Positions 26,101-50,703 of a DNA stretch of 64,000 nt are shown piece after piece. The notes under the pieces are model-generated. The model was not told the origin of the DNA. It made no database searches and saw only the letters and a program-made list of their open reading frames with translations. The position numbers and the translations under genes were made by a program. Location: positions 145,444 to 209,443 of IMG/VR virus record IMGVR_UViG_3300043446_003193. One strand, given 5' to 3'. Positions within the stretch are counted from its first letter, which is position 1. The number at the start of each line of letters is the position of its first letter.

Positions 26101-27963
26101 AGTACCACTATTCAAATCTGCATAAGTTCCTCCAGACCCTACTTTGTATTGAAAGTTATCATAAGTAAATGCAGTTGCTAATGATTTTGTTATACTAATA
26201 GAACCATTTGAATATTCTCTTCCAGTTACCCAACTTGCACCCAATCCAATTTGACTTTGATTTATTTTAAAACGAACACTAAAATTATCAGTTAATACAA
26301 ATCCATTTCCATCTGTAATTGTGGCCGTATGTGTTGATGTTCCATCATTTGCAGATGTCGCAGGATTATTAACAGTTATAGTAATTACTCCAGATGCCGT
26401 TTTTGCTCCTGATGCGGAAACCGTGCTATCGGTTGACGTAGCAGAAACACTTGTAACAGAAAATCCATTATCATTTGAACCATTAATAGTAACCGTTCCT
26501 GTAAAAGTTCTATTAGCTCCTGTTAAAACATAATCTTGATCATCAATTGTTAAAACTCCCTTTTGTGGTATTAATATATCTCCGGTTTCTGTATATCCGG
26601 ATACAAATGTAGAATTGCCATCGCTTCTTCTTGCTCTTACTCTTGCTTTTGCATATTGTGCAGTTGTAGTTTTACCTGCAATAGTTACCGAAGGTGTTAC
26701 ATTTGTACCGGCTGCAACCAAAGAAGTCCATGCTCCATAAGAACCACCACTATCTTTAACAGCATAATCTATATCATAATTTAAAGTAGTTCCACTTACA
26801 GCTGCAGTCAAAGCAGTGACCGTTACACCAAATGATTGTCCAAAAGCAGAATATGCTGCACTAATAGATGGTGAAACCATAGCAACAGTTACATTCGTAG
26901 TTGTATGATTTCTAACACTACTATTACTACTATTTGTAATATTTACTCTAAGAGATTGACTACCTAAAGTATTATAATAAATTGATAAATTTTGAGAAGT
27001 TGATGTAGAAATACTTGCTCCTGTTAATACCCAATTATAAGATATTGCAATAGAATCGGGATTATATAAAACTGTTGAAGTAACAGAATATGCAACAAAA
27101 GGTTCTACACTCGTAGAAGCACCAATTGATACCGCCATTGGTCTTCTAAATGTAGTTGCCGTAGTACTTGCCGTATCAAATGGGTTTGCCGAATCTTTGA
27201 CCACAATAGTATAATCATCATCGGCCGTATTACTTGAATTATTAAAAGTTGCAGTATTTACATCTGCAGAACCATAACCTGCTCCATTAAAATTATAATA
27301 ATACGGAGAAACACCACCTGCAACATTCACAGTAAAATCTACGGAACCGGTAGTATAATTATACGTTCCTGCGCCAGTAAATGATGGAGAAGTTGTAACT
27401 GATGTAATTGTTAAATCAACTGCATTTACAAAAACTGTTTTAGAATCATTTGCTTGTTTATTTGAAGAGTTTATTCTAAGTTCTAATCGTAATGTGTTTG
27501 TAGAATTTGGTACAATATATGTATTACTATTATCAACATAAAAGTCAGAAGCATTAGTTACATTTCCGGTAAGAGTTGCAGGAAATACATTTGTTCCAGT
27601 ATATACACCATTTACCCAGATTTTAATATATGCCGTTTCTCCGGACTGCATACCCGTCACAGTATATGTAAAATCTAATCTTTTACCTGATTGAGCATTT
27701 GTATTAGCAGGACTAGTTAAAGTATTTATTGTAATTGCAGGAACTTTACCTTCAAATTCTACAAACTCATATTGACTTCCAGTAGGCCTTGCTCCAGTAC
27801 TTGGGTTTAATACTCCGACAGTATTTGGTAAATCTCTGACAGTATTTGGGTCAACTGTACCGGTCAAAAATTGATTTGCAACATATGAACCACTTACTGT
27901 CGTAGTTGCAGTGTTAAGACCGGCAGAAGAACCTAAATCTCCAATTCGTATATTACTTGCCAT
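23167..27963 (-). CDS. Long Ser/Thr-rich fibre/adhesin (Ig/FN3-like beta repeats) with C-terminal Hint (BIL/hedgehog-like) domain
   Basis: Beta-rich T/S/G composition; GGGT/CLAKGTKI...TFEHP...SLDVE...YFANNILVHN at 23200-23646. Confidence 0.8.
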   Translation of the reverse strand: MASNIRIGDLGSSAGLNTATTTVSGSYVANQFLTGTVDPNTVRDLPNTVGVLNPSTGARPTGSQYEFVEFEGKVPAITINTLTSPANTNAQSGKRLDFTYTVTGMQSGETAYIKIWVNGVYTGTNVFPATLTGNVTNASDFYVDNSNTYIVPNSTNTLRLELRINSSNKQANDSKTVFVNAVDLTITSVTTSPSFTGAGTYNYTTGSVDFTVNVAGGVSPYYYNFNGAGYGSADVNTATFNNSSNTADDDYTIVVKDSANPFDTASTTATTFRRPMAVSIGASTSVEPFVAYSVTSTVLYNPDSIAISYNWVLTGASISTSTSQNLSIYYNTLGSQSLRVNITNSSNSSVRNHTTTNVTVAMVSPSISAAYSAFGQSFGVTVTALTAAVSGTTLNYDIDYAVKDSGGSYGAWTSLVAAGTNVTPSVTIAGKTTTAQYAKARVRARRSDGNSTFVSGYTETGDILIPQKGVLTIDDQDYVLTGANRTFTGTVTINGSNDNGFSVTSVSATSTDSTVSASGAKTASGVITITVNNPATSANDGTSTHTATITDGNGFVLTDNFSVRFKINQSQIGLGASWVTGREYSNGSISITKSLATAFTYDNFQYKVGSGGTYADLNSGTYTTAHNGWTAPSADQTWYYHVKASGGTYRQSDFNETSVTVYGYPNQGYGYSLTSNINSGTLSQVQSVVFSVTRSSGNFTKISARLDAYYPNGGSAGGQSLTDAQIDPDSVASFSFSALSLYDAICNSSTIGDGYGSVYLTYTISSGLYYYHTLTNKTVTVTREPGTIDVVKGGSGFVDGYAIRGVNFTLDASYTTNGPTETNSQGGYWYVWLDNNRMQASPLSFNGANPYNGTYLIRTNTSTTFCRKLATTSKTTLSSSSRGTVTYTWWGNLYTYSGTTNAWTLYINAGSERSKDISITVKGKRLASITGTPSVAFTKGYTEMSIYAGLLTYDSNDGTIDLTADNITVEYQIADTNGTVLTTQSGITFTGLSFGSTYKMRVKATDDWGTIKYSSWTANQLVEDLDYTFTLNTPATLYGIYAYQGPTYTPTRIINLDTWSGRTGGTFSTNSSVITFDNLEPNTKALASIHTVLSMDNKYTWSNFPGAYTTMTVSVDSGNAPGTGAYGMFRMFQNTYNGLWETADNTSPQQGEGALNIKTFQLYNTGDTSGNSLPYTNGNYYLAARVVSSATLGVTTTYRIHGQKSSTDTSQGTDYYIVLRNRGVVNTLSFVSKSVVCGGVTATYSVGQIDTATKLVIEKSTDNSTWTAAETFTSITANTNYAAFISLTSGTTMYFRAKIYNSSDTLLSTTATNSAISYNAVAASGNITAPTVSLDTPTCGTLTYAFSRTGTANAQNAATYYVVWYKCTFDYGPEGSILNQGSRSFGTSYAFSISSIACDNPIYYEIYAVSESGCSGTANSSCLIYKYTGAGCDCTGGGTCLAKGTKILMWDGSEKNVEDLIEGDLLKNISIDGFSEEEDAWKTFSTNTFDYVDSMSAVKSVTSGVWHYHYVINDKLKITFEHPIFIKRDNEYKFLRAEDVIVGDMMYNLDGNWEMIEEKIRVDELDEFISLDVETNDTYFANNILVHNVLGPGGKITP

Positions 27964-30900
27964 TAGATAAAACCTGTTTTAAAGTATTTACTTCTTTTTT
28001 TAAATTTTGTATTTGTTTAACCATAATTGGAATTAGTTCATTATATTTTATGGTTAAATACTCTCCCATTATTCTTCCATCTGTTAAATTTGGATATATT
28101 TTTTCAACATCTTGTGCAATAAATCCATAATGTTTTTTATTTTCACTATCAGAATTCCAACTATATGCAACCGGATGTAATCTATCCATATCTTCAATTT
28201 CAGTTTCATCTATATCAACTATATTTTTTTTCAATCTTATATCAGAACTAAGTGATGTTGAAAAACCGGCAATATCACCTTTTACATGCAATTCTCCATA
28301 GTGAGCAAAATATCCTGCAGATTTTATATTTGCATTAGCAGCTGTTGGTGTAGCAATATCTTCAACTTTAAGAAAATTACCAGTACTATCCTGTGAACTA
28401 TTAAATAATGCCTGTAATCCTCTTTCTGAAATTTCTACTTGTTTTGTTAATGAAGTAGCTGTTAAAGATAATCCTTTTGCATAATAATTTGTTGAAGATG
28501 GTGAATATGAATCTACTCCAATACTTTCTGCCCAAATTGCATATCCAGCTGGTATAGTACCAAATCCAAATAAAGTAAATGAATCATAATAATCAATATG
28601 CCATCTTGTTTTTCTATAATTCGCAACCAAACCATTTGATTTTGTAGTGGATATTTGTAATGGGTTTGTTGTTTTACCAAGAGTTATAAATTGAAAAGAA
28701 GTATCTGCAAATTCTTCTTGAGTACTTGTAGTAGATGGAGAAACTGTTCTAGAAATTGAACCAATTGATGTTCCACCATAAGATAATGTACTTGTTACAG
28801 TTGCAGTACCAGTAACCGAATCAAAAGAAGTATAAAAATCAATATATTGTCCATCCATTTGTGAAAGAGTAGTATATGATGTTCCTTTTTTAGTATTAAA
28901 ATATGATATAAAAGCAGTAACAGCTGCTTCAGCACTACCACCTATCCATCCTCTAGTGATAGAAGAATAATAATTTAAATTCGTTGGGTCTTGACTTAAA
29001 TTATATTTTATATGATATGCAATATTTAGAGCTGCTTGATCAACAGTTGAAAAAGTACCAGTAGAAGCTACATATGTATACTCCATTGTTGGAGCATTGT
29101 TCCATTCTAAATCAATTCTATATTTAACCGATGCGTTAATTGAATATGTTGATGTAGCAGATAAACTGGTATACATATTAGTACTTGTTGCCGACAAAGT
29201 AGCTACCGTAGAACCATTAACATTATACAAATACAAATTTTGTGGTGTTGAAGTTCCTATACTAAAATAAGTTTGAGCGGTAGTTGCCGTTATTGCACTA
29301 CCTGCTCCTGGAACTGTTGTTAACAATTCACCTGGATGAATAAGTACACGGTTTCCTGCATAGGTACTTTCCCCTGTAATTTGAATATAATTATCAGCCC
29401 CAGTTCCTCCAGCATTTAAAGTAATTTTATCTTTAGAAATGCTATTTTGACCAATAACCCACCCACCAATAGTACCATCAGTAGCAGTTATTTTTCCAGA
29501 TATGTTCGCGTTGGAAGCTACTAAAGCACCTGCAGTATCTACTCTAAATGGAGCAGAGTTAAATGCCGTATTACCCGCATGAAATCCTGCAATTGACATT
29601 ACCGCTTGTGAATTACCGGATGAATTACCTGCTATTACTCTTGATTGACCACCATCTAATATCACACCATTTGTTGCAGTACCACCAATTAATTTTCCTG
29701 CTTGAATTTCAAATCCACCAATTGATCCAGTTTGAGCAGTTAATGTTGTTGCAGATATTGCACCACCAATATCAACTATATTTGTTGCAGATGCATCGTA
29801 TTTAAAATAATTACTACCACTAACAAAACTTACTTTTGGTACAAATGAACTTCCACTAATTCCTAACCAAATACCATTAGTACCATATGATTGAACTCCT
29901 TGACCTATTGAAACAAATGGTTTGGTAGTTCCACCTGCTAATGTTATATTTGCAGCAGAACCAGATGCATTAGTACCAATATTTAAAGTATTTTTAACAT
30001 ACGATTCATCAAATATTGCAATCTTAGCTGCAACAAAGAAATCTTGTGTTCCCAAATATTCCCAATAAGAATTGCTTGCTCCATCGGTAGGTGCATTTCC
30101 AGTTGTTTGCTGTAATGTTGCGTAATATTTTGTAACACCTCCTGAACTTTGATAAACGGCATCTCTTCTTGAAGAACCCGCAACAGTTGTGTAATAATAA
30201 GTTGTGCCTGCTGCATATTCTCCTCTTAACACAATACCAGGACCCGTCGCTCCGGTATTTCCATCAGTACCATCCGATGAAACATTTACATTATGTGTTT
30301 TATAAAAAGTTGTAGAAGTTCCTTCCGAATCTACATATGATCCGGTAATGCTTACAATTAATCCACTTGTAGAAGATGGTGTAGAAGGTGTTATTGTTGT
30401 ATATCCATCACCATCTACACCGGCATTTGTACCATTTGTTACAGAAGATATTCTAAATGAAGGTATAACATATGGAGAAGTGGCATCATACGCATATGCA
30501 CTACCACCTTCATTTACATATAATTTAAATGAAGAAGGAGTACCATATGAACCTGCTGTACTTTTTGTAATAGTTTGTCCATCTTTTTCAATTGATACAA
30601 CTACCGCCGGTGGTGCCGCTAATGCTTTAGAAACGGTAGCTACAACATTTTTAGTACCAGATGTACCTTCACTATCGGTATAGTTTACAGGTATTGTTAC
30701 TTGAGCAGTTGAACCAGTTATTGAAGATGCCGTTGATGTTATTGTTATAACATTTGACGAAACTGTTCCTGCCAATCCATTTGTATATGTTGGTGTACCT
30801 ATTGAAGTAAATCTACTTGTACCAGATTCCAAAGCAGTTATCGTTAATGCGGTTGGAGTAGCAGAACCACTTGTTTTTGAATTTGCATTTATTGATTGTG

Positions 30901-33900
30901 CAGATGGAGATACTGCTACTAATACATTTGGTGTACCTGCTTTAGCTTTTGAATATGTTACTAATTTTACAAATGTACTATCACTTCCTCTACCATCTCT
31001 GTAAGTTACTTTTAAATTTATACTACCACTATCAGCGGATAACGCGGTTATAGAATAGTTGTTATTTGTAAGTACTGCTGTTACATTTGAAGATGATGAA
31101 ATACTTGCACTAAATTTATTGTTTCCAATTGTAGATGCGTATGAAATATCTTCACTTCCAACTTTTACTGATATAGAACCACTACTTGCTAAAAACCCAC
31201 CAAAAACAGTTCCACCAGAATATGCAGGAAATGTTGTATTTTCGTTTGATACTGTCACTGCAATTTGTGATTCAGCTATTACCGGAGTAATTGTAATTGT
31301 ATCACTATAAACTGCATTATTTAAATCATAAGCAGTAAATGTATATGTTGTTGCGCCAGATGAATATGAATAATCACTACCATTTATACTATATGATTGT
31401 ACACCGGTGGTATTATTGTTAGAACCAACGGTCAAAGCTGGTTTACTACTACCACTAGTTACAGTAATTTCATTTGTAGTACTTCCTAAATTATTTCTTT
31501 TTACATCAATTGTTATAGTTTGTCCAGATGGTGATAAACTCAAATCGGTCATTTTATAAAAAAACTGATTAGCGTTAGAAACTGCATTTAAGTTTTTACT
31601 CTTATCACCTTTTAATACACCTTCCAATTGTACCGAAGATGAATATCCTCCTTTATTAAAATAATAAGTTCCTTTATGTGTAAGTTGGGTAGGAGTAGCA
31701 TATGACCAAGATGCTACATTTGTACCTAGCATTGCAACATCGTGTTGATCATCTCCACTAAAAACACGATAAACAGACTCGGTAGATTTTCCTATATATT
31801 CGGTAGATATTAAAGCTAATTTTGGTAAATAAGAACCAGAAGTTATGTAAATACTACCAGAAACAATGTTATTTGTTAGCTTTATATCAATAAAATCATT
31901 AAGTTGTGCAGGAACATTATTATCGTCTGGATCATACACAAATTGATTTTTATTAGCAATTGCAATGAAATTTTGACCATCAATACCATCTGCACCAACA
32001 GCTCCTTGATCAACTCTATAAATGTTTACCAAATCTCTTACATCTTCGCAAGATGCCGTATATTGAACTCTACTAATTTTTGATGAAGATATTGATCCAG
32101 TAAAATTAGAAACCAAAAGAGTTGCGGATGTTTCCGTTACATTTGTTAATAAACCAGGATAAAAAGGTTCAGATGCATAAACCGATGGATTAATGTAATC
32201 ACCATTTGCATCAAATGCTGAAGAGTAGAATGTTACAGAACCGGTTAATCCTATTTTTGAAATATCAAAATTTATTGAAGATACTCCAATTGTTTCTCCT
32301 GAGCCAGAAAAACTAAATAGTGTATTATCTGGAGTTACTGTTAATGATTTTTGAACAATTGTATCTGTTCCACCAGTAAATGTAATTTCTTTTTCTAAAG
32401 TAACAGGTACATAATTGTTATTAATATCGTAAAATTCAAAACGAAAATCGTAAGTATCATTATTTACTTTAGTCGGAACATTTACATTTAGAGTAACTTC
32501 ATTAGGAGAAAAGTTTGTTTCTTGAGAAGCTCGTAAACTTATGTTTGATAAATACCATTCTCCTTGATGAATATTAAAAAATATTTGTCCCTGCCCATCA
32601 GTATCTGGTTTAAAATTTATTTGTTGTTTATCAAATCTTCTAAAAGATTCACTAACATTAAATTCACCTAAAAGTTTTCCATATCCAAGATCAGAGTCCT
32701 CAACTACGAATGCCGGTCCAACACCAAACACATTTAATTTTCCATAACCAAAAGAAGATGATTGCAATAAAAGACTGAAATCTAATTGATATTCAGTATT
32801 ACTTAGAAAATCAATATCATTGTGATTATAAAAAACTCTCTGTGGATGTTGTGTTGTATTTAAAGTATTATCGTCTTGTAGTTTTACTGAAGATGCTAAT
32901 ACTGAATCATTTTGTGTAGCAGTATAATATGTATTTTCTTCATGTTTTTTATATTTCCAAAAATCATCTATTATTTTTTGAGATGAAAATTGTCCTATTC
33001 TAACATTTACACTTCCACTATATGCATCAGTTTGAAATAGTTCATTTGATTCTAACTGAATATCTTCTAATAAACTATAATTTCCAATATCTGATTTTCT
33101 TTTACCAAATATTTTCAAACGATTTACATCACCACTAAATGTTTCCAAATTAGCTATTTTTATTTTAGCATAAGAAGAACTAATTGCAGAGTTTGTTAAA
33201 GTTACACTTTCGTTATATGGTAATGTAAATGATGCGGAAGAAAAATCAGTTACATATTGTACGGCGTTTGTGGCATTTGAAGATGTTTCATAATAAGGAA
33301 TTGTTGCTAATGCTTTTTTAGAATTAACAACATCTTTTATAATTGTAGAATATGATTGATTTAATCCAGTTATCGTAATTGTTTCACCTTCCATAGATGA
33401 TGAAAAATTACTTCCACTAATTTTTAATTCATAAATTGTATCACCTTTGAAAGTTCTAAAATTTGAACCAGATGTAGGTTGTACCGAAACACCATCAACA
33501 CTTCCACTAATAGTTACTCTATTTACAGTTCTATTGTATATTGGTAAAATTGTTTCAGTTATATCTACCGTCGGTCTACGATAGAAACGAATCTTTGTTG
33601 TATTTGCAATAATAGGATTTACATTCACTACTTTTTGCCATCTAACATTATATTGATTTTCCCAGTTTGAAGGGATTGGTGTTAGTAATCCATTAGCATC
33701 TTCATATTCACTTAATTCTCCTAATATAGTAATTGTACATGGACCAAATGCAGTATCTGGATAAACATATACTGCCACTACTTTTGAAGTTCCTTCATAA
33801 TATTCAGGAATACCTTCTCCTGGTTCGTGATAAATTACATTTCCTAATGCATCTTTAATTTCTATCTTTATAAGAGTATCGGCAACTAATTCAGGAGAAC

Positions 33901-34048: not shown

Positions 34049-34060
34049 TAATCTTTTTAC

Positions 34061-34098
34061 ATAAATATTCTCAAAAAAATAATCTTCACATATTTATA
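34061..34098. promoter_or_regulatory. Back-to-back ATATTTAT(A) motifs for the divergent fibre operon (-, 34061-34068) and RHH gene (+, 34090-34098)
   Basis: Motif orientation follows gene orientation. Confidence 0.65.
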
Positions 34099-34100
34099 TA

Positions 34101-34150: not shown

Positions 34151-34158
34151 AATAAGTT

Positions 34159-40151: not shown

Positions 40152-41375
40152 TTAGAAGTCTAATTTAACTTTGATTGCAATCTCTTTATCAAAAGATTTT
40201 TCAATTGGTTTTGAAGTTTTAGCTACTGCTAATAATTCATTTGCGTCATCATACAATCCAACAGTTGTAATGAAAACCTTAGGGTCTTTTTCAAATGTTG
40301 ATTGAACGAATTGTCCAACTGAACCAGTTACGAATGTTGGGTTATTTGAGAAGTTAAATTCTCTATTGTTTGCTCTTACGAAATAATGAGAGGTTGAAAC
40401 ATTCTCAGTTCTACGAGCTTGGAAATCTGCACCTAAATTAATTGCTTTAAATAAATTGATAGAACCAGTTAAGTTGTGATAAACACCACTTTGAGAACTA
40501 GTTGCACCCGCTAAATTACCACCAACACTTGCACTTATTGCAGATGGGTTTAATAAGATAACACCCATATCAGGATAGAATAAACCATATCCTTTACCAT
40601 TTGATGCTGTGTATGTACTAATAGATGATGTTAAAGCAGAACCAATGTTTAATGAACCACTAACAATATTATAAACTCTACCTGCAGTTGTTACATTCTC
40701 ATCTGTACCACCACTATCATCAATTAATGTAATTAAACCAACTGAACCAGAAAGTTTCAATGAGAAGTTTCCTGGGTCCAATCTTTCTTTATATCTTGCT
40801 CTATTTACATTAATTGCGTAGAAATTAGTTAAATCGTGTCCAGCTGCAGTTGAACCACTATATACACTAAAGTACGGGTCAGCAGAATCTAATAATACAT
40901 TTCTAAATTGGTTATAAACCGCTTTAGTAGGCATTGTAGATGAATCATCTTGTGTTAATGTTGGTGCACCATATCCATCAACATCACCATACGCAATTGA
41001 GAATTGAACCTCTGCTGTATCTGATGATGGAGTTGCGTTATAAACATCAATATAGTACTTACCACTTGCATCTGCAACTTGTGTTGAAGATGTATAGGCA
41101 ACTGTCAATGAACCGGTATCACCACTCCATATACCAGAAGTTACTATTTCTGTTTTGTTAGTTACTTTATCAATTGCACCAAATTTTTTATAAATACCAT
41201 TTGAAATAGTATTTGTATCTGCACTAATTTGTTCTCCTTGTCCTAAAAATGTGTTTACGATTCTAACTAATTCGTTAGTATCTACCGGAGTACCTGTTGT
41301 ATTTGCAGCAGTCGCTAAGTACTGTGATAAGTTACTTGCTAAAAGGGCTCCTCTATTGTCTCTTATTAATGCCAT
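40152..41375 (-). CDS. Baseplate/tail-collar structural protein
   Basis: C-terminal FITTVGLYDDANELLAVAK. Confidence 0.6.
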   Translation of the reverse strand: MALIRDNRGALLASNLSQYLATAANTTGTPVDTNELVRIVNTFLGQGEQISADTNTISNGIYKKFGAIDKVTNKTEIVTSGIWSGDTGSLTVAYTSSTQVADASGKYYIDVYNATPSSDTAEVQFSIAYGDVDGYGAPTLTQDDSSTMPTKAVYNQFRNVLLDSADPYFSVYSGSTAAGHDLTNFYAINVNRARYKERLDPGNFSLKLSGSVGLITLIDDSGGTDENVTTAGRVYNIVSGSLNIGSALTSSISTYTASNGKGYGLFYPDMGVILLNPSAISASVGGNLAGATSSQSGVYHNLTGSINLFKAINLGADFQARRTENVSTSHYFVRANNREFNFSNNPTFVTGSVGQFVQSTFEKDPKVFITTVGLYDDANELLAVAKTSKPIEKSFDKEIAIKVKLDF

Positions 41376-42055: not shown

Positions 42056-45000
42056 TTATTCTACTTCCAAAATTGGTTCACTTGCATCTCTACCTGCCTT
42101 ATTAACTCTCAATGTATTAGGATTAGTAGTAAATACTTCTACTGGAGGAGTACCGTCTAATGTAGTCGCTGCAGTATTTTTGGAACCTCTAAAGAAAGAA
42201 TTTTCTAATCCTCTTGTTAAATCGGAAGTATTTCTAAAGTGAGTAGGTAAGTATCCATTTAATGGAGTTACACTAACAATACTTCCAGTTCCTGCATTTA
42301 TAGTTTTTGAACCAGAAAATGGTTGTACATTTAAATATGTTTCATAATATACAGAAGATGTTAGTTCAACTCCACCTCTTTCATCTCCCTTACCATTAAC
42401 AACCACTTTATATTTAACAATATCTCTTCTTTTTTGTTCTTTAATTAAATCAACTTTGATTCTTTCTTTTACCGTTCTATTATTTTCATCAATATATGTT
42501 CTAATAGCATATCCGTTTTGTGCATATATTCCGAATCCAATTGTTTCATAATCAGTTTGACCAACTACAATATTTGAATTAATAATATCAATTTCACTAA
42601 GAATAGTTGGATTTGCTAAACCAGCATCTATTGAAGCAGTTTTTTGATAGTAATCCGCTGTATTTGATGTTTCATATCCTATATTTGTTTCGTATTGATA
42701 TGAATCTGAACTTATTCTCTCAATTGAACCGGTGTAAATTATACCTTCGTATTGTTCATTTTCTCCAGAAACTTTTTCTCCTAAATTAGCATCAATTAAT
42801 GCTTCTTTTTGAGTATTTTCTGCTAAAACAAAAGTAGTATCATTATAATGTATATCAACTTCATGTTGTTCGTTTTCTGCGGTAGGTTTACTTTTCGCTA
42901 TTTTACTTCTTTCTAAGAAATGTGGTTCAATCAATAAACCAGTAGTTGCTTTAACTCTTGCCGGCAACATTTTCTTAATATCTTCAAACATTGATTTCTC
43001 ATATAGTTTGATTAAGTTAATGTATTGGTATATATCTCTACCATCAAATCTTTGGAAATAATAGTGTCTTAAATCATCTAATCTTTTATATCTGTCTTTG
43101 TATCTATCAGATGGGTCACCAATATAATTATCCAAATTCAATCCACCCAAAGATTTTGCAATATCAATATTCAATTCTTTTGTAGGAGAAAAGAATAAAC
43201 CAACTCTATTAGAATCAGTAGGAGATTGGTCAAATGCCTTTTTAGTTGCTCTACTCTTATAAGATAAATCAACTCCAACACTTCCAGATATTTCTTCTCC
43301 TGTCAATGTATATTGTGATTCAAATCTAACTTTATTTGTTGAATAACGAGAAGAACCCGCATCTGGCATTTCTACTACAACCGTTCTATCTATTACTTCA
43401 AATTGATATGGGTATGTGTAAGAAGCTGGGAAATTATAAGCAGATGCACTATATGAAGCCGAAGGGTTTACAGAATACAATTCAGTTTGTAAACCATCTT
43501 CATAATCATTTCTAGTTGTGCTTCCGCTGAAATAGATGTTAGCATCTACATTTATCAAAGAAGATGTTGCCGCTAAATTCTTTGGATATTCAAAATCTAA
43601 ACGGAAATATAAATCATCAGTTGATGCCGATACGTGGTTTCCATTAACCATTTCAGGGAATGAAACGTGCTCATAGAATCTTTCTTTATCCAATGGTGTA
43701 GACCATAAACGGAATTCATCCACACTTCCTACAAAATCATTTCCCAATCTAATATAAGAACCATTATTCCAAGAAGAGTTTGTGTCTGCTATACTTGAAG
43801 AAACAGATTGTTGAAATATACTTCTTTCTTTTTCGGCTTGTCTAATGTTTAATTCAAAATTATGATAACTACCACTTACCTCTCTACTAACTTCAATACC
43901 AAAAAATTTATTATTAAATATTGGTAATAATGATGATGATATAGCTCCACCACCATAACTAAATGTAAGAACACCAGTTTCTCCACTACCACTCATATTT
44001 AAAACCATTCCGTTATCGCTCGTAATAACATTATAATTCCCCGCAGTAGTAGGTTTTACAAAAAATTCTATTGTATCTGGTTTTCTATTTCTTTCTGTAT
44101 TTCTCCACTCAAATTCAACATACGAACCAGATGTTATTTTTAATCCGGTTGTTATATTATCAAATTCATATTTTCCTTTACTTTCATCCGATACCTCTGG
44201 TCCACCAAATTCTAAAATTGAAAGATTTGATGATGGGATACCATAACATGCCATTAATGCGTATATACCTCTTCTGGTTCCTTTATGTTTTAAAAGATAT
44301 GGTAAGTTGTTTACAATTCTTCTCCATACTTCATATGTTCTTTTTTTAGCAGGAGTTTGGTATTTAACACTACCATTTGAATCTAATCCAAATGCGTATT
44401 CCCAAAGTTTTGAATCGGCTGCCAAATTCTTTGCATCCCAACCGAATGATTTAAGGGTATCAAATAGTATTTTATCAGATATTCCACCATTTGCTTTATA
44501 ACCCAAACCTCTACCTTTTTCAATTGCTTTAGTATGGTAATAAATGTTATCAAAGTGTTGTCCAATCATTGAAAAGAATAATAATAAACTATCATTTTCT
44601 GCATTGGTAACAATATATTGTGGAATATTGTTTTGAACCCAATTTGAATTTTGTATATCGTATGTTTCTGCTAATTCAATTATATTCTCGTACCAATTAG
44701 TAACAGTTGCTGTTGATGAATTTAATCTAGTTGTTCCATTATACGGCCAGGTTAAAGAACTTGCAGTTGATAATGTAAATGAAGAAGATGTGTATAAGAA
44801 TTTTTCAAATCCATCAAATCCTTGTATTATTTGATTTTTCTTTATAGTTTGTCTTTCTTTTTCGTTCAATTCTGCTATTGAACCTGCACCAACCGATGCA
44901 CTAAGAATTAAATTTTCATATAATTCTATTAATTGAACTTTATATACAAAATTATCAACTCTTTCTTTTGCAGAACTAAAGTGTACAAAATTGTTCCATA

Positions 45001-47089
45001 GATAAGCCGAACCACTTGCATACTCAATGTTTAATGAATCGGTATCAATGAAAGAAGAACTTAAATATGTTGATACTAAATTTGCAGATGAACTGACAGA
45101 ACCACTTAATATTAAATCATCTAAAGATTCATATCCGGTTGATTTACCAGTAACAAAATCTACTTCTACATTGAAATTAGGCCCTTTTATTGGTGGACAC
45201 TTAACATCATCTTGTTCGTTTAATACAACCGTCTCAATTAATGGGTTTGTAAGTAATTTTGTAATCCAAAAAGTTGAATTAGTATTTATACCAGCAGGAA
45301 GTGGTGAATATAATTTTAATATTGTAGATTTAACTTCTTTATCAACAATTTCATTTCCTAATGTATCTTGTTTCTTTGATGATAATGTCCAGTTGTCCTC
45401 TTCCCAAGATGTAATCAATACCTGATCAGCATTTCCAAAATTAGCTAAGTGAGTAAGATACTTACTTTCTTTTTCTGGTTCAAGAAATTTTAATTTTTCT
45501 ATGAACGCATCATATATTGATTTTTTAATAATATCTTCATCTAATTTAATAGCAGGATATAGAATATCTGTTTTAATTTCATATTCATTTCCAACTAATT
45601 CTATTTCACCAGATTTATTATATGGTTTTAAAATAAGTGTTACATTATCATTACCATTCCATTTTGGATATTTTTCTGCTAATGTTCTAAGATTAATTTT
45701 AAAACTACCATTTGGTGTTAAATTCTTTAATAAAGAAACTTTAGTTTTATCTTTTAATAATAAATCAACATCAACACTAGAAACTGCAAATGTTTTATAA
45801 GTTACATTATAATCTATTTGTAAATCTGAAAATGATGGTACATCTATTGTATCTGGAAAAGATATCTCTGTTATTGATGGAAAATCATTAACAGTTGCAA
45901 AGTTTATTATAACTTCTACTTTATCACCGGTTCCATAAGTATTTCCTATTGGAACTAAATAAATTTTCTTTTGGCCAAATATTCCTTTGAAATTATTTTT
46001 AAAAGACAATTTTACAAATCCATCCGCAGGGTTTACTCTTACTACATTATCTTGAGTAATGTATACGTCAATAAAATCAGAATTAGTTGAAGTAAAATCT
46101 ATATTGATAAAAGTATCAGAATCCGAATCTTTTACTTGCTTTGCATATGAAGTTGTAGTTAAATTGATTGTAGGCTTTGGAACTGCAATTTCTTTTTCTA
46201 AAGCAACATAAACAGCAACTCCACCTTTTTCTAATTCTTTTGCAGATACTTTAAAATTAATTGTAGTTTCTGTCCATTTTGAAAAATCGGTTGGATATGT
46301 TTCTGCAATGTTTTTAGATGTATAATAAAATTTTGTATAAGAAAAACCCGCTGGCAATGACCCGTTTATTGTAAAATATATTTCTGATTTTTCAATATTT
46401 GCAGAACTAATCTTTTTACCATCTGTATCTGATGAACTGAGTTTTAAAGAATCAGAATCTACTATATCACTACCATTTACAATTTTATAATCTAATTTTA
46501 ATATATCTCCTAATTCATTTTTAAAATTAGAATTAAATGCTATTTCATAGTTTTTAAGAGTAGGAGTAGAAACAGCATCTTGTGTAGATGATACGGCTGT
46601 TGGTTTAAATGAAAAATAAAGATTTTCACTTATAGTTGTTGTTAATAATTGTTTACTATTAATTTCTACATAATCCGTATTACTATTTTCTTTTAAACCG
46701 AACTCTTTAATTATAATTCTTTCTTGAAATGTTTGTTGACCTGTTACAAAATTATATCCACTCGGTACAGAGTCAATCCTTACATCAAAATAATTTTTTG
46801 CTATTTTTCCATCAATTTTAGCATAATATTTTCTATTACTTCCAAACGTTAAAGATGGAGAAAATTGGGATGTTACTGACAATCCTGATCCTAAACTCGT
46901 TGTTCCATCAAAAAATTCTGCATTTTCGTTAGAAGAAAGATACAATTTTATAACACCATTTGTATTAACATTGGTATCAGTATTTGATGATGTTGTTCCA
47001 CCACCACCTCCACCTGTTAAACTTTCATCAGTTCCAATTGGATCATTTGGTGCTGCCATTTTATATCTTCTATCGTATCTTATTGACAT
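42056..47089 (-). CDS. Large baseplate wedge-like protein with LamG-like domain
   Basis: NLPYLLKHKGTRRGI (wedge/gpI-like), TIEFFVK...FVGSVDEFRLW; in the baseplate cluster. Confidence 0.6.
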   Translation of the reverse strand: MSIRYDRRYKMAAPNDPIGTDESLTGGGGGGTTSSNTDTNVNTNGVIKLYLSSNENAEFFDGTTSLGSGLSVTSQFSPSLTFGSNRKYYAKIDGKIAKNYFDVRIDSVPSGYNFVTGQQTFQERIIIKEFGLKENSNTDYVEINSKQLLTTTISENLYFSFKPTAVSSTQDAVSTPTLKNYEIAFNSNFKNELGDILKLDYKIVNGSDIVDSDSLKLSSSDTDGKKISSANIEKSEIYFTINGSLPAGFSYTKFYYTSKNIAETYPTDFSKWTETTINFKVSAKELEKGGVAVYVALEKEIAVPKPTINLTTTSYAKQVKDSDSDTFINIDFTSTNSDFIDVYITQDNVVRVNPADGFVKLSFKNNFKGIFGQKKIYLVPIGNTYGTGDKVEVIINFATVNDFPSITEISFPDTIDVPSFSDLQIDYNVTYKTFAVSSVDVDLLLKDKTKVSLLKNLTPNGSFKINLRTLAEKYPKWNGNDNVTLILKPYNKSGEIELVGNEYEIKTDILYPAIKLDEDIIKKSIYDAFIEKLKFLEPEKESKYLTHLANFGNADQVLITSWEEDNWTLSSKKQDTLGNEIVDKEVKSTILKLYSPLPAGINTNSTFWITKLLTNPLIETVVLNEQDDVKCPPIKGPNFNVEVDFVTGKSTGYESLDDLILSGSVSSSANLVSTYLSSSFIDTDSLNIEYASGSAYLWNNFVHFSSAKERVDNFVYKVQLIELYENLILSASVGAGSIAELNEKERQTIKKNQIIQGFDGFEKFLYTSSSFTLSTASSLTWPYNGTTRLNSSTATVTNWYENIIELAETYDIQNSNWVQNNIPQYIVTNAENDSLLLFFSMIGQHFDNIYYHTKAIEKGRGLGYKANGGISDKILFDTLKSFGWDAKNLAADSKLWEYAFGLDSNGSVKYQTPAKKRTYEVWRRIVNNLPYLLKHKGTRRGIYALMACYGIPSSNLSILEFGGPEVSDESKGKYEFDNITTGLKITSGSYVEFEWRNTERNRKPDTIEFFVKPTTAGNYNVITSDNGMVLNMSGSGETGVLTFSYGGGAISSSLLPIFNNKFFGIEVSREVSGSYHNFELNIRQAEKERSIFQQSVSSSIADTNSSWNNGSYIRLGNDFVGSVDEFRLWSTPLDKERFYEHVSFPEMVNGNHVSASTDDLYFRLDFEYPKNLAATSSLINVDANIYFSGSTTRNDYEDGLQTELYSVNPSASYSASAYNFPASYTYPYQFEVIDRTVVVEMPDAGSSRYSTNKVRFESQYTLTGEEISGSVGVDLSYKSRATKKAFDQSPTDSNRVGLFFSPTKELNIDIAKSLGGLNLDNYIGDPSDRYKDRYKRLDDLRHYYFQRFDGRDIYQYINLIKLYEKSMFEDIKKMLPARVKATTGLLIEPHFLERSKIAKSKPTAENEQHEVDIHYNDTTFVLAENTQKEALIDANLGEKVSGENEQYEGIIYTGSIERISSDSYQYETNIGYETSNTADYYQKTASIDAGLANPTILSEIDIINSNIVVGQTDYETIGFGIYAQNGYAIRTYIDENNRTVKERIKVDLIKEQKRRDIVKYKVVVNGKGDERGGVELTSSVYYETYLNVQPFSGSKTINAGTGSIVSVTPLNGYLPTHFRNTSDLTRGLENSFFRGSKNTAATTLDGTPPVEVFTTNPNTLRVNKAGRDASEPILEVE

Positions 47090-47116
47090 CTATTCTTTTT
47101 TATAAATATTTTTATT

Positions 47117-48466: not shown

Positions 48467-48478
48467 AATTTATTTATA

Positions 48479-49636
48479 TTAGAAAGATTTTGGATGCATC
48501 TTTCCAAATCTTGTTTTATAATCCTTTGATTCAGTTGTACCATCTGCTTTTGTAACAGATACCGTCATAGTTGAATCATAACTTACACTATGTGAGTTGC
48601 CATATAATGGAAAACCTCCTGGTTTTGAATCTATTCCATCACCCGCTTTGTGATCAATTCTAAGTTGTATATCTTTAGTACCTCCAGGTGGTAAACTAAA
48701 CTGTGTTTCAGGAATAATTAACCAATCAGGATTTCTTCCGATTCCACTTGGTTTAGTGTGACTTATTTTTACGGTTGCGGCCGCTTTATCATTATTGGTA
48801 AACTTTAATGTTCCACCGGTTGACCATCTAACTTCGCTACTACCTGATTTTCCATTACCTCTTAATTTAACATCTTTATCTTCAGTAGGGCCGTCTATTT
48901 TTAATATAACTGCTTTATTAATTGCGTCTGCTCCAGATGCCAATGCAGTATTTGTAGTTGATTGTTGAATCGCTTGTTGTTGTTGAACCGCACCTAATTG
49001 TGCCTGTAAACCTTCAATGATTGAATTCAATGAATCAATTTGTTTAATTAATGCTTCAATTTGTGCTTTAAATCCAGTATTTTGTGATTGTAAAGAAGCT
49101 CTTAAAATAGATTCATCAATTGATTTTTGAACTGCTGATTGTATTTGATTTGAAAAATCTTGTATAGTTCCAGTTAAAGTATCAATTTGGTTAACCAATG
49201 TATCGTTTGTTTGATCAACTGATAATCTATTATTTATTTCAGTTTGAACCTGTGATTTTAAAGTAACTATCTGGGAATTAAGTGCTTCAACTTTTGCAGT
49301 TAATGATTGAACTTGCTTTCTTAAATCTTCTACTAAAGCAACTTGCTCATCATATAAAGGTTTTGGAACGAGATTTAAATTACGTTCTGGTATTACTGGT
49401 TTTAATTCTTTTACCTCAACATCAATTGCTTTTAATATTTCTTCTTCATCATACTTTGGTGCAGTTAATGATTTAAATAACAAAGAAGATGCAACATTTT
49501 TTTCATCAACAACTGTTACACCATATTCGTTTTTAGAAACAGCAGAACTTCCCGATACTCTCAATACACTTTCAAGTTCAGAACTTCTTGTTTCATCTAA
49601 TTTTTGAGCAATTGCTTCCAATGATGTTAATGCCAT
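48479..49636 (-). CDS. Coiled-coil structural protein with C-terminal Ig-like domain
   Basis: Heptad Q/L-rich middle; beta-rich C-terminus. Confidence 0.5.
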   Translation of the reverse strand: MALTSLEAIAQKLDETRSSELESVLRVSGSSAVSKNEYGVTVVDEKNVASSLLFKSLTAPKYDEEEILKAIDVEVKELKPVIPERNLNLVPKPLYDEQVALVEDLRKQVQSLTAKVEALNSQIVTLKSQVQTEINNRLSVDQTNDTLVNQIDTLTGTIQDFSNQIQSAVQKSIDESILRASLQSQNTGFKAQIEALIKQIDSLNSIIEGLQAQLGAVQQQQAIQQSTTNTALASGADAINKAVILKIDGPTEDKDVKLRGNGKSGSSEVRWSTGGTLKFTNNDKAAATVKISHTKPSGIGRNPDWLIIPETQFSLPPGGTKDIQLRIDHKAGDGIDSKPGGFPLYGNSHSVSYDSTMTVSVTKADGTTESKDYKTRFGKMHPKSF

Positions 49637-50703
49637 TATGCAACTATTTGAAATATTAATTTATTATCAATTATTGTTGAAATTCCACTTTCAACTATTT
49701 TAAGTTTTAACCTATATGCTCTATTAATTGGTAAAGTATTTAAATCAACAATAAAATAATTTGAAGTTGAATCACAACTTAATTTACTATAATCTCCAAA
49801 AGGAATTATAATTTCATTAGTTGTATAATCTTCTAATTGATAATATGAAGATGTTGGTAAATACTTTGATTGGTCGTATTCAAATGTTGTACTAAATGAT
49901 TTTGAAGGAAACATATCTCTACCCTTAACTCTTATTTTTATTTTTTGATTAGCAGGATATTGTTTTTTTAAATTTGATACAACAACCTTATAACCATCTT
50001 CTGCAGAGCCGGTTACCGGTGCTAAACTTCCTGTTGAAACTGAACTATCATCCCAAACTATTTCTAATTTAGGTTCATATATTGTATTAGTTTCTTTTGA
50101 AAAGAATTTAAGAACACCATAATCTTGTGTATCGTTTTCTTTATCCAAAGCATGGTGTAATATAAATCCATTGTTTGGTAGAGAACCACTAACCCATAAA
50201 TTTACAATACCAGTTACATCCATTCTAACATCATCCGATTCGTATGAATAAGATTGTGATGCCATAGATGCAGTATACCAAGTTCCACCACCACCATTGG
50301 AGATAGAGCCCGTATCGGAGCCACTCACATATGCATCTGGATTAATATCATATACCATCCATTCGTTTATACCATCTTTATAAAACCAACTAACACCATC
50401 TGTTGTTATGTTATCAAATTTAGTACCAGTTCCCATTGTCCAACTTTGAGAAACTGCGTTTGCATAAATTGTATATTCTAATGGAATTTCTTCGGATTTA
50501 GCCGCCTTTAAATTAAGATATGCTTTCCAACCACTTCCCGTTTCCAAATTAGAAACATTAAATTTAATCAATGTTCTATTTACATCTTTAGTAGCACCAT
50601 AATATAGTTTACCTACTTCTAATATTTCATCTCTCCCAGCATTTTGATTTGGTTGCTGTAAGTAGATACTTGCATCGTATGATGATGTATAAAATTTATG
50701 CAT
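49636..50703 (-). CDS. Virion protein with DNRLRE/CBM96-like domain
   Basis: DASIY..QPNQNAG....EVG...RTLIKF...DVTGIV..W......NNGFIL...PKLEI. Confidence 0.6.
   Translation of the reverse strand: MHKFYTSSYDASIYLQQPNQNAGRDEILEVGKLYYGATKDVNRTLIKFNVSNLETGSGWKAYLNLKAAKSEEIPLEYTIYANAVSQSWTMGTGTKFDNITTDGVSWFYKDGINEWMVYDINPDAYVSGSDTGSISNGGGGTWYTASMASQSYSYESDDVRMDVTGIVNLWVSGSLPNNGFILHHALDKENDTQDYGVLKFFSKETNTIYEPKLEIVWDDSSVSTGSLAPVTGSAEDGYKVVVSNLKKQYPANQKIKIRVKGRDMFPSKSFSTTFEYDQSKYLPTSSYYQLEDYTTNEIIIPFGDYSKLSCDSTSNYFIVDLNTLPINRAYRLKLKIVESGISTIIDNKLIFQIVA

What the first reader, a model, noticed from the sequence alone, without database searches (positions are those of the whole stretch)
27953..50703. 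Pervasive [ST]-[GAS]-S tripeptide in outer virion proteins: possible modification sequon
Seen: SGS/TGS/SAS/TAS/SSS recur across unrelated structural proteins: neck (WSGSISGSFISGSS), capsid insertion (ATASW, LSASL, QSGSI), the 78-aa protein, fibre 27953 (VSGSIYITSGSY and many more), 39125 (LSGS x3, TSGS), 40152, 42056 (LSGSVSSS, PSASYSAS) and 49636 (VSGSDTGS). By eye they are nearly absent from portal, terminase, scaffold, SbcCD and primase. Inference: convergent selection for a surface sequon, for example O-glycosylation by phage glycosyltransferases (two are in this window). Not counted formally.
Basis: partly seen in the sequence, partly recalled or inferred. Interest (0 to 1): 0.65.

Follow-up and report, generated by a model that had tools for sequence, protein, structure and literature searches.

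The report
Ser-Gly-Ser motif on phage surface
The outer proteins of this large T4-like phage and its relatives carry far more copies of a Ser/Thr-Gly-Ser loop motif than chance allows, and the same phages share a set of sugar-adding enzymes, so the motif may mark where the virion gets a sugar coat, though no sugar has been shown.

Summary
The signal is [ST]-G-S between hydrophobic residues. SGS is the most over-represented of all 8000 tripeptides in the window (43 seen, 10 expected) and in the 209-kb genome (164 vs 49); TGS ranks second. S-A-S and T-A-S are weakly enriched; S-S-S and T-S-S are not. The excess survives shuffles within 10-residue blocks and masking of paralogues, and many synonymous codons encode it. 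It is confined to outward-facing virion proteins: fibres, baseplate periphery, outer sheath domains, neck, capsid insertion. Relatives share it (Flavobacterium phage immuto, Microcystis phage Mel-JY01, Rhodothermus phage RM378, about 50 environmental contigs). T4, Acinetobacter phage 133, S-RIM2 and PP35 do not. Sites turn over between homologues. One equally close relative, LR756508, has the same proteins almost without the motif and lacks two of three clade glycosyltransferases. The genome encodes six glycosyltransferases. Only one is in the window; it follows the fibre genes without a gap. Published nucleoside analysis found no glycosylated base in immuto DNA. O-glycosylation is the best single explanation (about 0.4) but is unproven. 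A loop habit without modification remains a serious rival.

The parts
27953..34048 (-). Tail fibre, 2031 aa, with a C-terminal S74 chaperone domain; 19 [ST]GS sites, partly in about 52-aa tandem units (residues 956, 1007, 1060, 1111)
   Evidence: Pfam PF13884 and phrog_1980; 31 [ST][GAS]S vs 16.4 expected, p<0.0005; site positions
42056..47089 (-). Large outer baseplate protein, 1677 aa, clade-specific; 10 [ST]GS sites
   Evidence: 26 vs 6.6 expected, z 7.4; orthologues in immuto and Mel-JY01; no Pfam, PHROG or PDB match
40152..41375 (-). Baseplate-region protein, 407 aa; 6 [ST]GS sites. In the structure model they sit at strand ends, hairpin turns and one helix N-cap
   Evidence: 11 vs 2.6 expected; AlphaFold2 model with pLDDT 88; family alignment A2
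39125..40078 (-). Baseplate-region protein, 317 aa; 5 [ST]GS sites; shares a C-terminal 39-aa module with 40152-41375
   Evidence: 6 vs 1.2 expected; BLAST 51% identity over 39 aa; orthologues carry 5 sites each, the LR756508 orthologue 0
49636..50703 (-). Baseplate protein, 355 aa, next to the gp6-like wedge; 6 [ST]GS sites
   Evidence: 9 vs 1.6 expected; orthologues carry 3 and 4 sites, the LR756508 orthologue 0
50703..52706 (-). gp6-like baseplate wedge protein; 2 [ST]GS sites
   Evidence: phrog_219 and phrog_6; site positions
2719..3915 (-). Neck / head-tail adaptor protein (T4 gp13-like); 4 [ST]GS sites, three of them packed into the N-terminal 20 residues (WSGSISGSFISGSS), an arrangement specific to this phage
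   Evidence: phrog_211; 7 vs 1.3 expected; alignment with relatives
4015..5640 (-). Major capsid protein; 2 [ST]GS sites (residues 229, 254) inside a stretch that has no counterpart in T4 gp23
   Evidence: phrog_138; alignment
10123..10359 (-). 78-aa head-region protein; 2 [ST]GS sites
   Evidence: 3 vs 0.45 expected
3..206 (-). First 68 residues of an 830-aa fibre-like protein that continues upstream of the window (genome 143157-145649); 23 [ST]GS sites in the whole protein
21309..22697 (-). Glycosyltransferase: a GT7 (beta-1,4-galactosyltransferase-like) catalytic domain fused to a concanavalin-A-like Laminin_G_3 domain. It follows the two fibre genes and a 154-aa gene without a promoter-sized gap
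   Evidence: PF13733, PF02709 and PF13385 above their cut-offs; closest solved chain is Drosophila beta4GalT7 3lw6, E 2.6e-36, with the DVD and WG-EDDD motifs kept; gene spacing and promoter-like sites
23167..27963 (-). Second fibre, 1598 aa, rich in S, T and G but NOT enriched for the motif (an internal contrast)
   Evidence: 8 vs 13.2 expected; 3 [ST]GS vs 4.2 expected
34061..34068 (-). Late-promoter-like site (coding strand ATATTTAT) 13-20 nt before the fibre start codon. The next such site downstream is at 21228-21236, after the GT7 gene
   Evidence: function inferred

Best explanation
[ST]-G-S, flanked by hydrophobic residues, is a positively selected surface-loop motif on the outward-facing virion proteins of one clade of distant T4-like phages. 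Its most likely role is as an acceptor site (sequon) for O-glycosylation of Ser by phage-encoded cytoplasmic glycosyltransferases. In this scheme the clade-conserved enzymes would start the glycan on folded or folding structural proteins. These enzymes are a 210-aa GT2, an adjacent pair of GT4-type GT-B enzymes of 423 and 460 aa, and often a 366-aa GT2. Lineage-specific enzymes would then extend and decorate the glycan. In this phage those are the fibre-linked GT7 + lectin-domain protein, a further GT2, a methyltransferase and a HAD + sugar-nucleotidyltransferase fusion. Shown: the enrichment, its dependence on residue order, its restriction to outer proteins, its restriction to the clade, the turnover of sites, and the presence and distribution of the enzymes. 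Inferred: that the enzymes act on virion proteins, that the motif is what they recognise, and which Ser is modified.
For: (1) SGS and TGS rank first and second among all tripeptides genome-wide. The excess survives shuffles within 10-residue blocks (164 vs 54, 115 vs 44) and paralogue masking (165 vs 72.8). Same-composition permutations are not enriched. (2) Selection acts at the protein level: at least 12 different synonymous 9-mers encode SGS. The first Ser uses AGT in 64% of cases against a 29% background, which is one step from Thr ACT and fits S/T interchange. (3) The motif is confined to exposed parts. The late/structural block has 267 vs 77 expected; early genes have 12 vs 15. Tube, hub, portal, protease and terminase have 0 sites, and the tape measure 1 against 0.7 expected. 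All 17 sites in four clade sheaths lie outside the conserved inner C-terminal domain. In the model of 40152-41375 the motif glycines are never in strand cores. (4) The fold does not need the motif. Outside four conserved positions, 112 diverse homologues carry 202 sites vs 70.5 expected, spread over 83 alignment columns. LR756508 is as close by capsid identity (54.7%), yet its orthologues carry 0 sites in the sheath, neck and two baseplate proteins, where this phage, immuto and Mel-JY01 mostly carry 2-7 each (immuto's neck has none). (5) Clade specificity: enrichment is 2.2-3.4x in this phage, immuto, Mel-JY01 and RM378 and 2.8-6.7x in 50 of 51 environmental loci. It is absent or not order-specific in T4, Acj133, S-RIM2 and PP35. 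(6) Enzymes: the GT4-460 gene occurs in exactly the same 7 of 50,697 phage records as the baseplate protein. GT2-210 and both GT4-type genes are in immuto, Mel-JY01 and both 100%-complete environmental genomes. LR756508 lacks GT2-210 and the 423-aa enzyme. (7) DNA is an unlikely target. The genome has no thymidylate-synthase-type hydroxymethylase, and T4 rang as a positive control in the same search. Immuto DNA contains canonical dA, dC and dT plus fdPreQ1 (bioRxiv 10.1101/2023.04.13.536721). (8) The closest solved relative of GT2-210 is the flagellin O-GlcNAc transferase domain of Listeria GmaR (profile E 1.1e-6; function from PMC9638930). The closest solved relative of GT4-460 is chlorovirus glycosyltransferase B736L. 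(9) The GT7 + lectin-domain gene follows two fibre genes with no promoter-sized gap.
Against: No glycan has been detected on any virion of this clade. The link between motif and enzymes is a correlation with one negative case (LR756508) and shared ancestry among the positive cases. RM378 has only weak GT2-210 homologues and few sites in the shared orthologues. The conserved glycosyltransferase island lies just downstream of the DNA polymerase, clamp loader and a nuclease, has no late-promoter-like site of its own, and so looks early or middle. Non-virion proteins show no avoidance of the motif (12 vs 15), which a promiscuous enzyme reading three residues might be expected to cause. Loops and strand ends are also where a purely structural turn motif would sit. 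The known phage virion glycosylation, in mycobacteriophages, is at the C-termini of capsid and tail-tube subunits, not at loop sequons (as summarised in PMC12619734). Phage glycosyltransferases can also build complex glycans on DNA (Pyle et al. 2024, cited in PMC12619734) or alter host surface glycans.
Confidence: 0.4

Rival explanations
1. The motif is purely structural: a favoured strand-turn-strand or loop sequence (hydrophobic, S/T, G, S, hydrophobic) that this clade's beta-rich outer proteins and fibres use by descent and habit, with no modification.
For: The flanks show the alternating hydrophobic pattern of beta-strands. In the model of 40152-41375 the sites lie at strand ends, two hairpin turns and a helix N-cap. 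72% of motif glycines in the family lie in coil and none in strand cores. A few positions are deeply conserved: residues 239-241 are invariant out to RM378, and family positions 135, 239 and 350 carry the motif in 54-72% of homologues. Fibres contain tandem units that each carry the motif at a fixed place. Twelve paralogous fibre genes spread it by duplication.
Against: Other glycine-turn tripeptides (NGS, SGN, DGS, SGD, AGS, SGA, SGT) are not enriched. T4 and three other myoviruses with beta-rich fibres lack the order-specific signal. LR756508 orthologues of the sheath, neck and two baseplate proteins carry no site, so these protein families can do without the motif. Most sites are at non-conserved positions and still 2.9x over expectation. 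The excess remains after paralogue masking. A structural habit alone does not explain why unrelated proteins in one clade converge on the same tripeptide.
Confidence: 0.3
2. The motif is recognised by a different clade-specific factor, or serves another surface function. Possibilities are another modification of Ser (for example phosphorylation or acylation), a docking site for an assembly chaperone, or a weak adhesive or anti-adhesive surface feature. In this reading the glycosyltransferases act on something else, such as the host envelope or a soluble product.
For: The arguments for a common selective agent (clade specificity, turnover, dispensability for the fold) do not identify that agent. 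The glycosyltransferase island sits among early/middle genes. The strict preference for Ser at the third position (SGT 25 vs 26.9, TGT 36 vs 25.1) fits a chemical role for that Ser without saying which.
Against: The Pfam scans of the window's larger proteins and of about twenty clade-shared or glycan-island genes showed no kinase, acyltransferase or dedicated chaperone shared by the clade, but many clade genes have no annotation. The glycosyltransferases are the only conserved modifying enzymes seen, and hosts span three phyla, which argues against a host-specific glycan target.
Confidence: 0.2
3. The enrichment is an artefact of S/G/T-rich composition, low-complexity patches, paralogous repeats or a DNA-level repeat.
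For: The enriched proteins are richer in S, G and T than the rest. Fibre paralogues and tandem units repeat some sites.
Against: The excess holds in per-protein shuffles, in 10-, 20- and 40-residue block shuffles, against permutation controls and after paralogue masking. The codons used are diverse, and the top 9-mers occur almost only in frame on the coding strand. Fibre 23167-27963, which is rich in S, T and G, is not enriched.
Confidence: 0.02

Closest known systems
Virion O-glycosylation in mycobacteriophages (Freeman et al. 2023, as summarised in PMC12619734)
   Same: Phage-encoded glycosyltransferases, sometimes with methyltransferases, are thought to decorate exposed virion proteins in the host cytoplasm.
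   Different: In mycobacteriophages the glycans sit on the C-termini of the capsid and tail-tube subunits, and I know of no reported short sequon. Here the candidate sites are internal loop tripeptides on the sheath, baseplate, neck and fibres. The tube has none. No glycan has been shown.
Capsid glycosylation by virus-encoded enzymes in chloroviruses (PDB 3oy2 is a chlorovirus glycosyltransferase, B736L)
   Same: Chloroviruses carry their own glycosyltransferases and sugar-nucleotide genes. GT4-460 is most similar among solved structures to B736L (E 7e-11).
   Different: The chlorovirus glycans are N-linked at atypical sites on one capsid protein (my own knowledge, not tested here). The similarity covers only the nucleotide-sugar-binding half of the enzyme.
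Cytoplasmic O-glycosylation of flagellins (Listeria GmaR, PMC9638930; Caulobacter FlmG, PMC7591256)
   Same: A soluble enzyme glycosylates Ser/Thr of a protein that later forms an external filament. GT2-210 is most similar among solved structures to the GmaR glycosyltransferase domain (E 1.1e-6).
   Different: GmaR carries a TPR domain proposed to recognise the substrate. The phage enzyme is the catalytic domain alone. To my knowledge, flagellin sites have no three-residue consensus.
Sequon gain and loss in viral envelope glycan shields (N-x-S/T)
   Same: A short motif is enriched on exposed surfaces, with site positions turning over between relatives while site density is kept.
   Different: That system is N-linked, made by host enzymes and found in eukaryotes. 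It is an analogy of pattern only.
Ser-Gly attachment sites of proteoglycans, extended by beta4GalT7
   Same: The window's GT7 domain matches beta4GalT7 best (about 45% identity by my count over the 153 aligned residues). By my own knowledge that enzyme adds galactose to xylose on Ser of Ser-Gly sites, and the phage motif contains Ser-Gly and Gly-Ser.
   Different: Proteoglycan sites have acidic neighbours, whereas the phage motif has hydrophobic ones. The score margin over beta4GalT1 is small (129 vs 113 bits). The acceptor-binding C-terminal part is replaced by a lectin-like domain. The gene is absent from relatives that share the motif. A xylosyltransferase was not looked for.

Membership tests
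Protein glycosylation sequon (general) | A short motif over-represented on exposed proteins beyond what composition predicts | tested here: met
   SGS z 16.5 and TGS z 11.2 genome-wide; block shuffles; permutation controls; restriction to the outer sheath domains
Protein glycosylation sequon (general) | The acceptor residue is shown to carry a glycan | not testable with these tools
   Needs glycoproteomics on virions; no published data found
Protein glycosylation sequon (general) | Motif density co-varies with presence of the transferase across genomes | tested here: inconclusive
   Five complete genomes have both the trait and all three core enzymes. LR756508 lacks two of the enzymes and the trait. 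There is only one negative case, and RM378 is intermediate.
Mycobacteriophage-type virion glycosylation | Phage-encoded glycosyltransferases are present | tested here: met
   Six glycosyltransferases, plus a sugar-nucleotidyltransferase fusion and a methyltransferase
Mycobacteriophage-type virion glycosylation | Sites lie at the C-termini of the capsid and tail-tube subunits | tested here: not met
   The tube has no site. Capsid sites are internal (residues 229 and 254 of 541). Most sites are in the baseplate, sheath and fibres.
CAZy GT7 / beta-1,4-galactosyltransferase (for 21309-22697) | GT7 N- and C-region profiles above the curated cut-off | tested here: met
   PF13733 scores 74.8 bits (cut-off 27) and PF02709 scores 73.3 bits (cut-off 23)
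CAZy GT7 / beta-1,4-galactosyltransferase (for 21309-22697) | Metal-binding DVD motif and the WG-EDDD catalytic motif | tested here: met
   HDVDMLP and WDWGMEDDD align with the same motifs of Drosophila beta4GalT7
CAZy GT7 / beta-1,4-galactosyltransferase (for 21309-22697) | The C-terminal part of the catalytic domain, which forms the acceptor site | tested here: not met
   The alignment ends at residue 154. A Laminin_G_3 domain (residues 171-354) follows instead.
GmaR-like flagellin O-GlcNAc transferase (for the 210-aa GT2) | Sequence similarity of the catalytic domain | tested here: inconclusive
   GmaR is the best of only two PDB matches, at E 1.1e-6 and 31.5 bits. The structure model was too poor for a fold comparison (pLDDT 56).
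GmaR-like flagellin O-GlcNAc transferase (for the 210-aa GT2) | A TPR substrate-recognition domain | tested here: not met
   The protein is 210 aa, the catalytic domain only
DNA-glucosylating phage transferases (T4 type) | A hydroxymethyl-pyrimidine pathway (thymidylate-synthase-like hydroxymethylase) | tested here: not met
   PF00303 is absent from this 100%-complete genome while T4 rings in the same search. The Tet_JBP search is uninformative because nothing rang anywhere.
DNA-glucosylating phage transferases (T4 type) | Glycosylated bases in virion DNA | tested here: not met
   For the relative immuto only: LC-UV-MS/MS found dA, dC, dT and fdPreQ1. This phage's own DNA has not been tested.
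Beta-turn / hairpin structural motif | Located at strand ends and in tight turns | tested here: met
Beta-turn / hairpin structural motif | Required by the fold, so conserved among orthologues | tested here: not met
   Most sites are at variable columns. LR756508 orthologues lack them. Three or four positions in one family are conserved.

The most novel reading that the evidence does not exclude
[ST]-G-S in a hydrophobic strand-loop context is a true O-glycosylation sequon, read by a phage-encoded cytoplasmic protein-glycosylation system (a GT2 plus a pair of GT4-type enzymes). The system would coat the whole outer surface of the virion (sheath, neck, baseplate, fibres, capsid insertion) in an abundant aquatic clade of distant T4-like phages, and each lineage would elaborate its own glycan. 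That would be the first defined sequon for phage virion glycosylation, and it would make glycan sites predictable from sequence.
Probability: 0.35. Interest if true: 0.9.

Novelty: new variant of a known kind. Interest (0 to 1): 0.72.

Why it matters
If the motif marks glycan attachment, it would show that large environmental myoviruses coat their tails and fibres with self-made glycans at sites that can be read from sequence. This bears on host recognition, on resistance to proteases and grazers, on particle stickiness, and on how phage surfaces evolve. The clade is abundant: each of two of its proteins has close to 8000 relatives among the 8000 word-sharing candidates scored in the protein collection. 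It also has cultured members (Flavobacterium phage immuto, Microcystis phage Mel-JY01, Rhodothermus phage RM378), so the idea can be tested directly. Even if there is no modification, a clade-wide, order-specific tripeptide signature limited to exposed virion parts is unusual and needs a selective agent to explain it.

Tried and rejected
1. Composition, local composition, paralogy and a DNA-level repeat were all tested as explanations and rejected.
2. T4's late-promoter word TATAAATA is rare on the coding strand and is not placed before structural genes. A different word, (A)TATTTATA, takes that position.
3. The idea that 17139-21224 is a second glycosyltransferase was rejected. It carries a cytidylyltransferase-like (NMNAT-type) N-terminus, an HExxH motif and an EKTDG ligase-like motif.
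4. Sequence searches of fibre 27953-34048 and of protein 42056-47089 against solved structures found nothing. A profile of the 40152 family gave only chance-level hits.
5. Foldseek and VIA-align searches with the 40152-41375 model gave no convincing fold (best E 0.08; best Z 5.0 over 74 residues).
6. The AlphaFold2 model of the 210-aa GT2 was too poor (pLDDT 56) to search with.
7. Avoidance of the motif in non-virion proteins was looked for and not found (12 vs 15).
8. A literature search on the phage names was mostly noise. The 'moraphage' paper (PMC12619734) reports four core glycosyltransferase groups in another aquatic lineage, but I could not show that it is this clade. Freeman et al. 2023 is not in the held library.
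10. The read-mapping and complex-prediction tools were not used, because they do not bear on a protein modification. No other genetic code was needed. Nothing in the window resembled human sequence or a toxin gene.

Full report
WHAT THE WINDOW IS

All genes lie on the minus strand of a 32% G+C sequence. The window is the last 64 kb of a 209,443-bp virus record that CheckV rates 100% complete.

[quoted passage not shown] It is 39% identical to that of Rhodothermus phage RM378 and only distantly related to T4 gp23. Other T4-type genes place it as a distant T4-like myovirus:
- T4-type portal and large terminase
- prohead protease
- gp25-like protein
- gp6-like wedge, SbcCD and primase
- neck protein

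CHECKING THE OBSERVATION

An unbiased ranking of all tripeptides shows where the signal lies. SGS comes first in the window (43 vs 10.1), while its same-composition permutations GSS and SSG occur 13 and 9 times. Genome-wide, SGS (164 vs 48.7, z 16.5) and TGS (115 vs 42.1, z 11.2) rank first and second.

Three controls hold:
- Shuffling within blocks of only 10 residues leaves expectations of 54 and 44.
- Masking every region that has a paralogue or internal repeat leaves 165 vs 72.8.
- In the masked structural block, SGS has z 12.7 and TGS z 6.2. SAS and TAS are only weakly raised (z 2.2 and 2.9). SSS, TSS, SGT, SNS and SDS are not raised.

The motif is therefore [ST]-G-S. It is preceded and followed by hydrophobic residues, and the alternating pattern after it is typical of a beta-strand.

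The motif is encoded by many synonymous 9-mers, so selection acts on the protein. The first Ser strongly prefers AGT, one step from Thr ACT, which fits the S/T interchange at that position.

Two points in the finding did not hold. Fibre 23167-27963 is rich in S, T and G but not enriched. Pfam finds only one glycosyltransferase in the window.

WHERE THE MOTIF SITS

The feature is much larger than the stated coordinates. Upstream of the window lies about 45 kb of fibre-like genes, twelve of them paralogues sharing an N-terminal shaft. All are motif-rich.

- Genes from 87.8 kb onward (the late/structural block) hold 267 sites vs 77 expected.
- The 112 early genes hold 12 vs 15.
- Tube, hub, portal, protease, scaffold-region proteins and terminase have none, and the tape measure has 1 against 0.7 expected.
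- The sheath, neck, capsid insertion, outer baseplate proteins and fibres are enriched.
- In the sheaths of four clade members, all 17 sites lie N-terminal of the conserved C-terminal region, the only part that aligns with T4 gp18. By my own knowledge of gp18, that region forms the inner layer of the sheath.

An AlphaFold2 model of 40152-41375 (pLDDT 88) places its six sites at strand ends, two hairpin turns and a helix N-cap. Across 112 homologues the motif glycine is in coil in 72% of cases and never in a strand core.

The sites are thus loop or turn elements on outward-facing parts.

IS IT JUST THE FOLD?

Several results argue that it is not.

1. In the 40152 family (1949 cluster representatives in the big library) only four positions are conserved. 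Outside them, the 112 diverse homologues still carry 202 sites vs 70.5 expected, spread over 83 alignment columns.
2. Other glycine-containing turn tripeptides are not enriched.
3. The signal is specific to the clade:
   - Present: this phage, immuto, Mel-JY01 and RM378 at 2.2-3.4x. 50 of 51 environmental loci around the baseplate gene show 2.8-6.7x.
   - Absent: T4 and Acinetobacter phage 133 show nothing.
   - Not order-specific: cyanophage S-RIM2 and Dickeya phage PP35 show an SGS excess no larger than that of SSG, and no TGS excess.
4. LR756508 is as close to this phage by capsid identity as immuto and Mel-JY01. Its orthologues of the sheath, neck and two baseplate proteins have no site at all, where the others mostly have 2-7 each. 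Its baseplate neighbourhood is the lowest measured among the named genomes, 1.8x against 3.0-6.5x.

The same protein families therefore exist with and without the motif. Something specific to most of this clade keeps creating it on exposed loops.

CANDIDATE AGENT

The window's enzyme (21309-22697) is a GT7 domain. By my count from the printed alignment it is about 45% identical to Drosophila beta4GalT7 over 153 residues. The DVD and WG-EDDD motifs are intact, and the domain is fused to a concanavalin-A-like domain. It follows the two fibre genes and a small gene with no promoter-sized gap, behind a late-promoter-like site. However, it has no match in 50,697 phage records, including the relatives that share the motif. 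At most it is a lineage-specific extender.

Outside the window, at genome positions 50.4-62.0 kb, lies a glycan island:
- GT2, 366 aa
- GT2, 229 aa
- a methyltransferase
- a HAD + sugar-nucleotidyltransferase fusion
- GT2, 210 aa
- two GT4-type GT-B enzymes, 423 and 460 aa

The distribution of the core enzymes is as follows:
- The 460-aa enzyme occurs in exactly the seven phage records that hold the clade's baseplate protein.
- The 210-aa and 423-aa enzymes are in immuto, Mel-JY01 and both 100%-complete environmental genomes examined.
- LR756508 has only the 460-aa enzyme.
- RM378 has the 460-aa enzyme and weak 210-aa homologues.

Immuto and Mel-JY01 carry different accessory genes beside the core, an aminotransferase in one and a methyltransferase in the other.

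DNA is an unlikely target. The genome has no thymidylate-synthase-type hydroxymethylase, while T4 rings as a control in the same search. Published LC-UV-MS/MS of immuto DNA found canonical dA, dC and dT, with fdPreQ1 replacing dG.

Among solved structures, the 210-aa enzyme is closest to the flagellin O-GlcNAc transferase domain of Listeria GmaR (E 1.1e-6). The 460-aa enzyme is closest to chlorovirus B736L. Both similarities are weak pointers only.

WEIGHING THE EXPLANATIONS

The pattern is what one expects of a sequon under selection on a virus surface:
- enrichment that depends on residue order
- restriction to exposed parts
- turnover of sites with density maintained
- loss of the motif in the one lineage that lacks two of the enzymes
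- enzymes that have a non-DNA target

Against this stand several points:
- Nothing shows a sugar on these proteins.
- The correlation has one negative case.
- The conserved island lies with replication genes and lacks a late-promoter-like site.
- Non-virion proteins do not avoid the motif.
- A turn-forming structural motif would occupy the same places.
- The one documented phage system modifies C-terminal tails, not loops.

I rate O-glycosylation at about 0.4, an unmodified structural habit at about 0.3, another recognition or modification role at about 0.2, and artefact at about 0.02.

NOVELTY AND TESTABILITY

Virion glycosylation by phage enzymes is known. A defined tripeptide signature spread over the whole outer surface of a myovirus clade is not, to my knowledge. 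Three cultured members make the proteomic and genetic tests straightforward.

LIMITS

- Gene calls outside the window come from a simple ATG-only ORF caller.
- Expectations for the environmental loci are composition products, not shuffles.
- Only 340 of the 484 kb of LR756508 were translated, though the enzyme searches covered the whole record.
- The promoter classes are inferred from word enrichment alone.

Noticed in passing
window 21309-22697 (-): The GT7 domain is about 45% identical (my count over the 153 aligned residues) to animal beta-1,4-galactosyltransferase 7, an unusually close match for a phage protein. It is fused to a Laminin_G_3 lectin-like domain. The protein has no match in 50,697 phage records. 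This could be a gene acquired from a eukaryote or from an unsampled bacterial lineage.
   Followed up: partly
window 17139-21224 (-): A 1361-aa fusion protein. It has an N-terminal cytidylyltransferase-like (NMN-adenylyltransferase-type) domain, a long low-complexity linker, an HExxH metalloprotease-like motif (HEMVH) and a C-terminal region with an EKTDG motif like the KxDG of nucleotidyl-transferring ligases. Mel-JY01 has a homologue.
   Followed up: partly
genome 99.6-141.6 kb (loci L001-L003), upstream of the window: About twelve paralogous fibre genes (637-1130 aa) share a shaft of about 250 aa (38-82% identity), with 14-15-residue SIET..ASN..RL repeats followed by a K-TGS-la-TGS-N-F module. 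Together with the other fibre-like genes, this is an unusually large fibre arsenal for one phage.
   Followed up: partly
genome 50.4-62.0 kb (loci L046, L047): A glycan-synthesis island beside the DNA polymerase, clamp loader and a PD-(D/E)XK nuclease. It holds three GT2 enzymes, two GT4-type enzymes, a methyltransferase and a HAD + sugar-nucleotidyltransferase fusion. Part of it is clade-conserved.
   Followed up: yes
whole genome; in the window at 34061-34068 and 21228-21236: Two promoter-like word classes appear on the coding strand. (A)TATTTATA sits mostly 25-45 nt before the start codons of structural genes and the endolysin, and is likely a late promoter. TTTGGTA-N10-14-TTTTTCGTATATT sits before non-structural genes, and is likely an early promoter. 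T4's TATAAATA is not used.
   Followed up: partly
window 23167-27963 (-): This 1598-aa fibre lacks the motif despite a composition rich in S, T and G. It has weak, sub-threshold HINT/intein-like hits at its C-terminus (PF14890, PF07591). It has no homologue in the relatives compared, so it may be a recent acquisition.
   Followed up: no
window 39125-40078 and 40152-41375 (-): These two otherwise unrelated baseplate-region proteins share a C-terminal module of about 39 aa (51% identity). The module is the most conserved part of the 40152 family.
   Followed up: no
window 57804-58439, 61270-61662, 59015-59884 (-): Auxiliary genes in the window: peptide deformylase, an Hsp20 small heat-shock protein and a UvdE UV-damage endonuclease.
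   Followed up: no
Mel-JY01 83441-84929; environmental genome G004 195278-196702: The orthologue of the 460-aa GT4 enzyme is split into two ORFs in Mel-JY01 and carries one in-frame TGA in G004. These could be sequencing errors, pseudogenes or recoding.
   Followed up: no
window 2719-3915 (-), residues 1-20: The neck protein's N-terminus carries three SGS in 14 residues in this phage only. Immuto and Mel-JY01 have D-G, A-G-E or gaps at the same places. This is a clear example of recent motif gain.
   Followed up: yes
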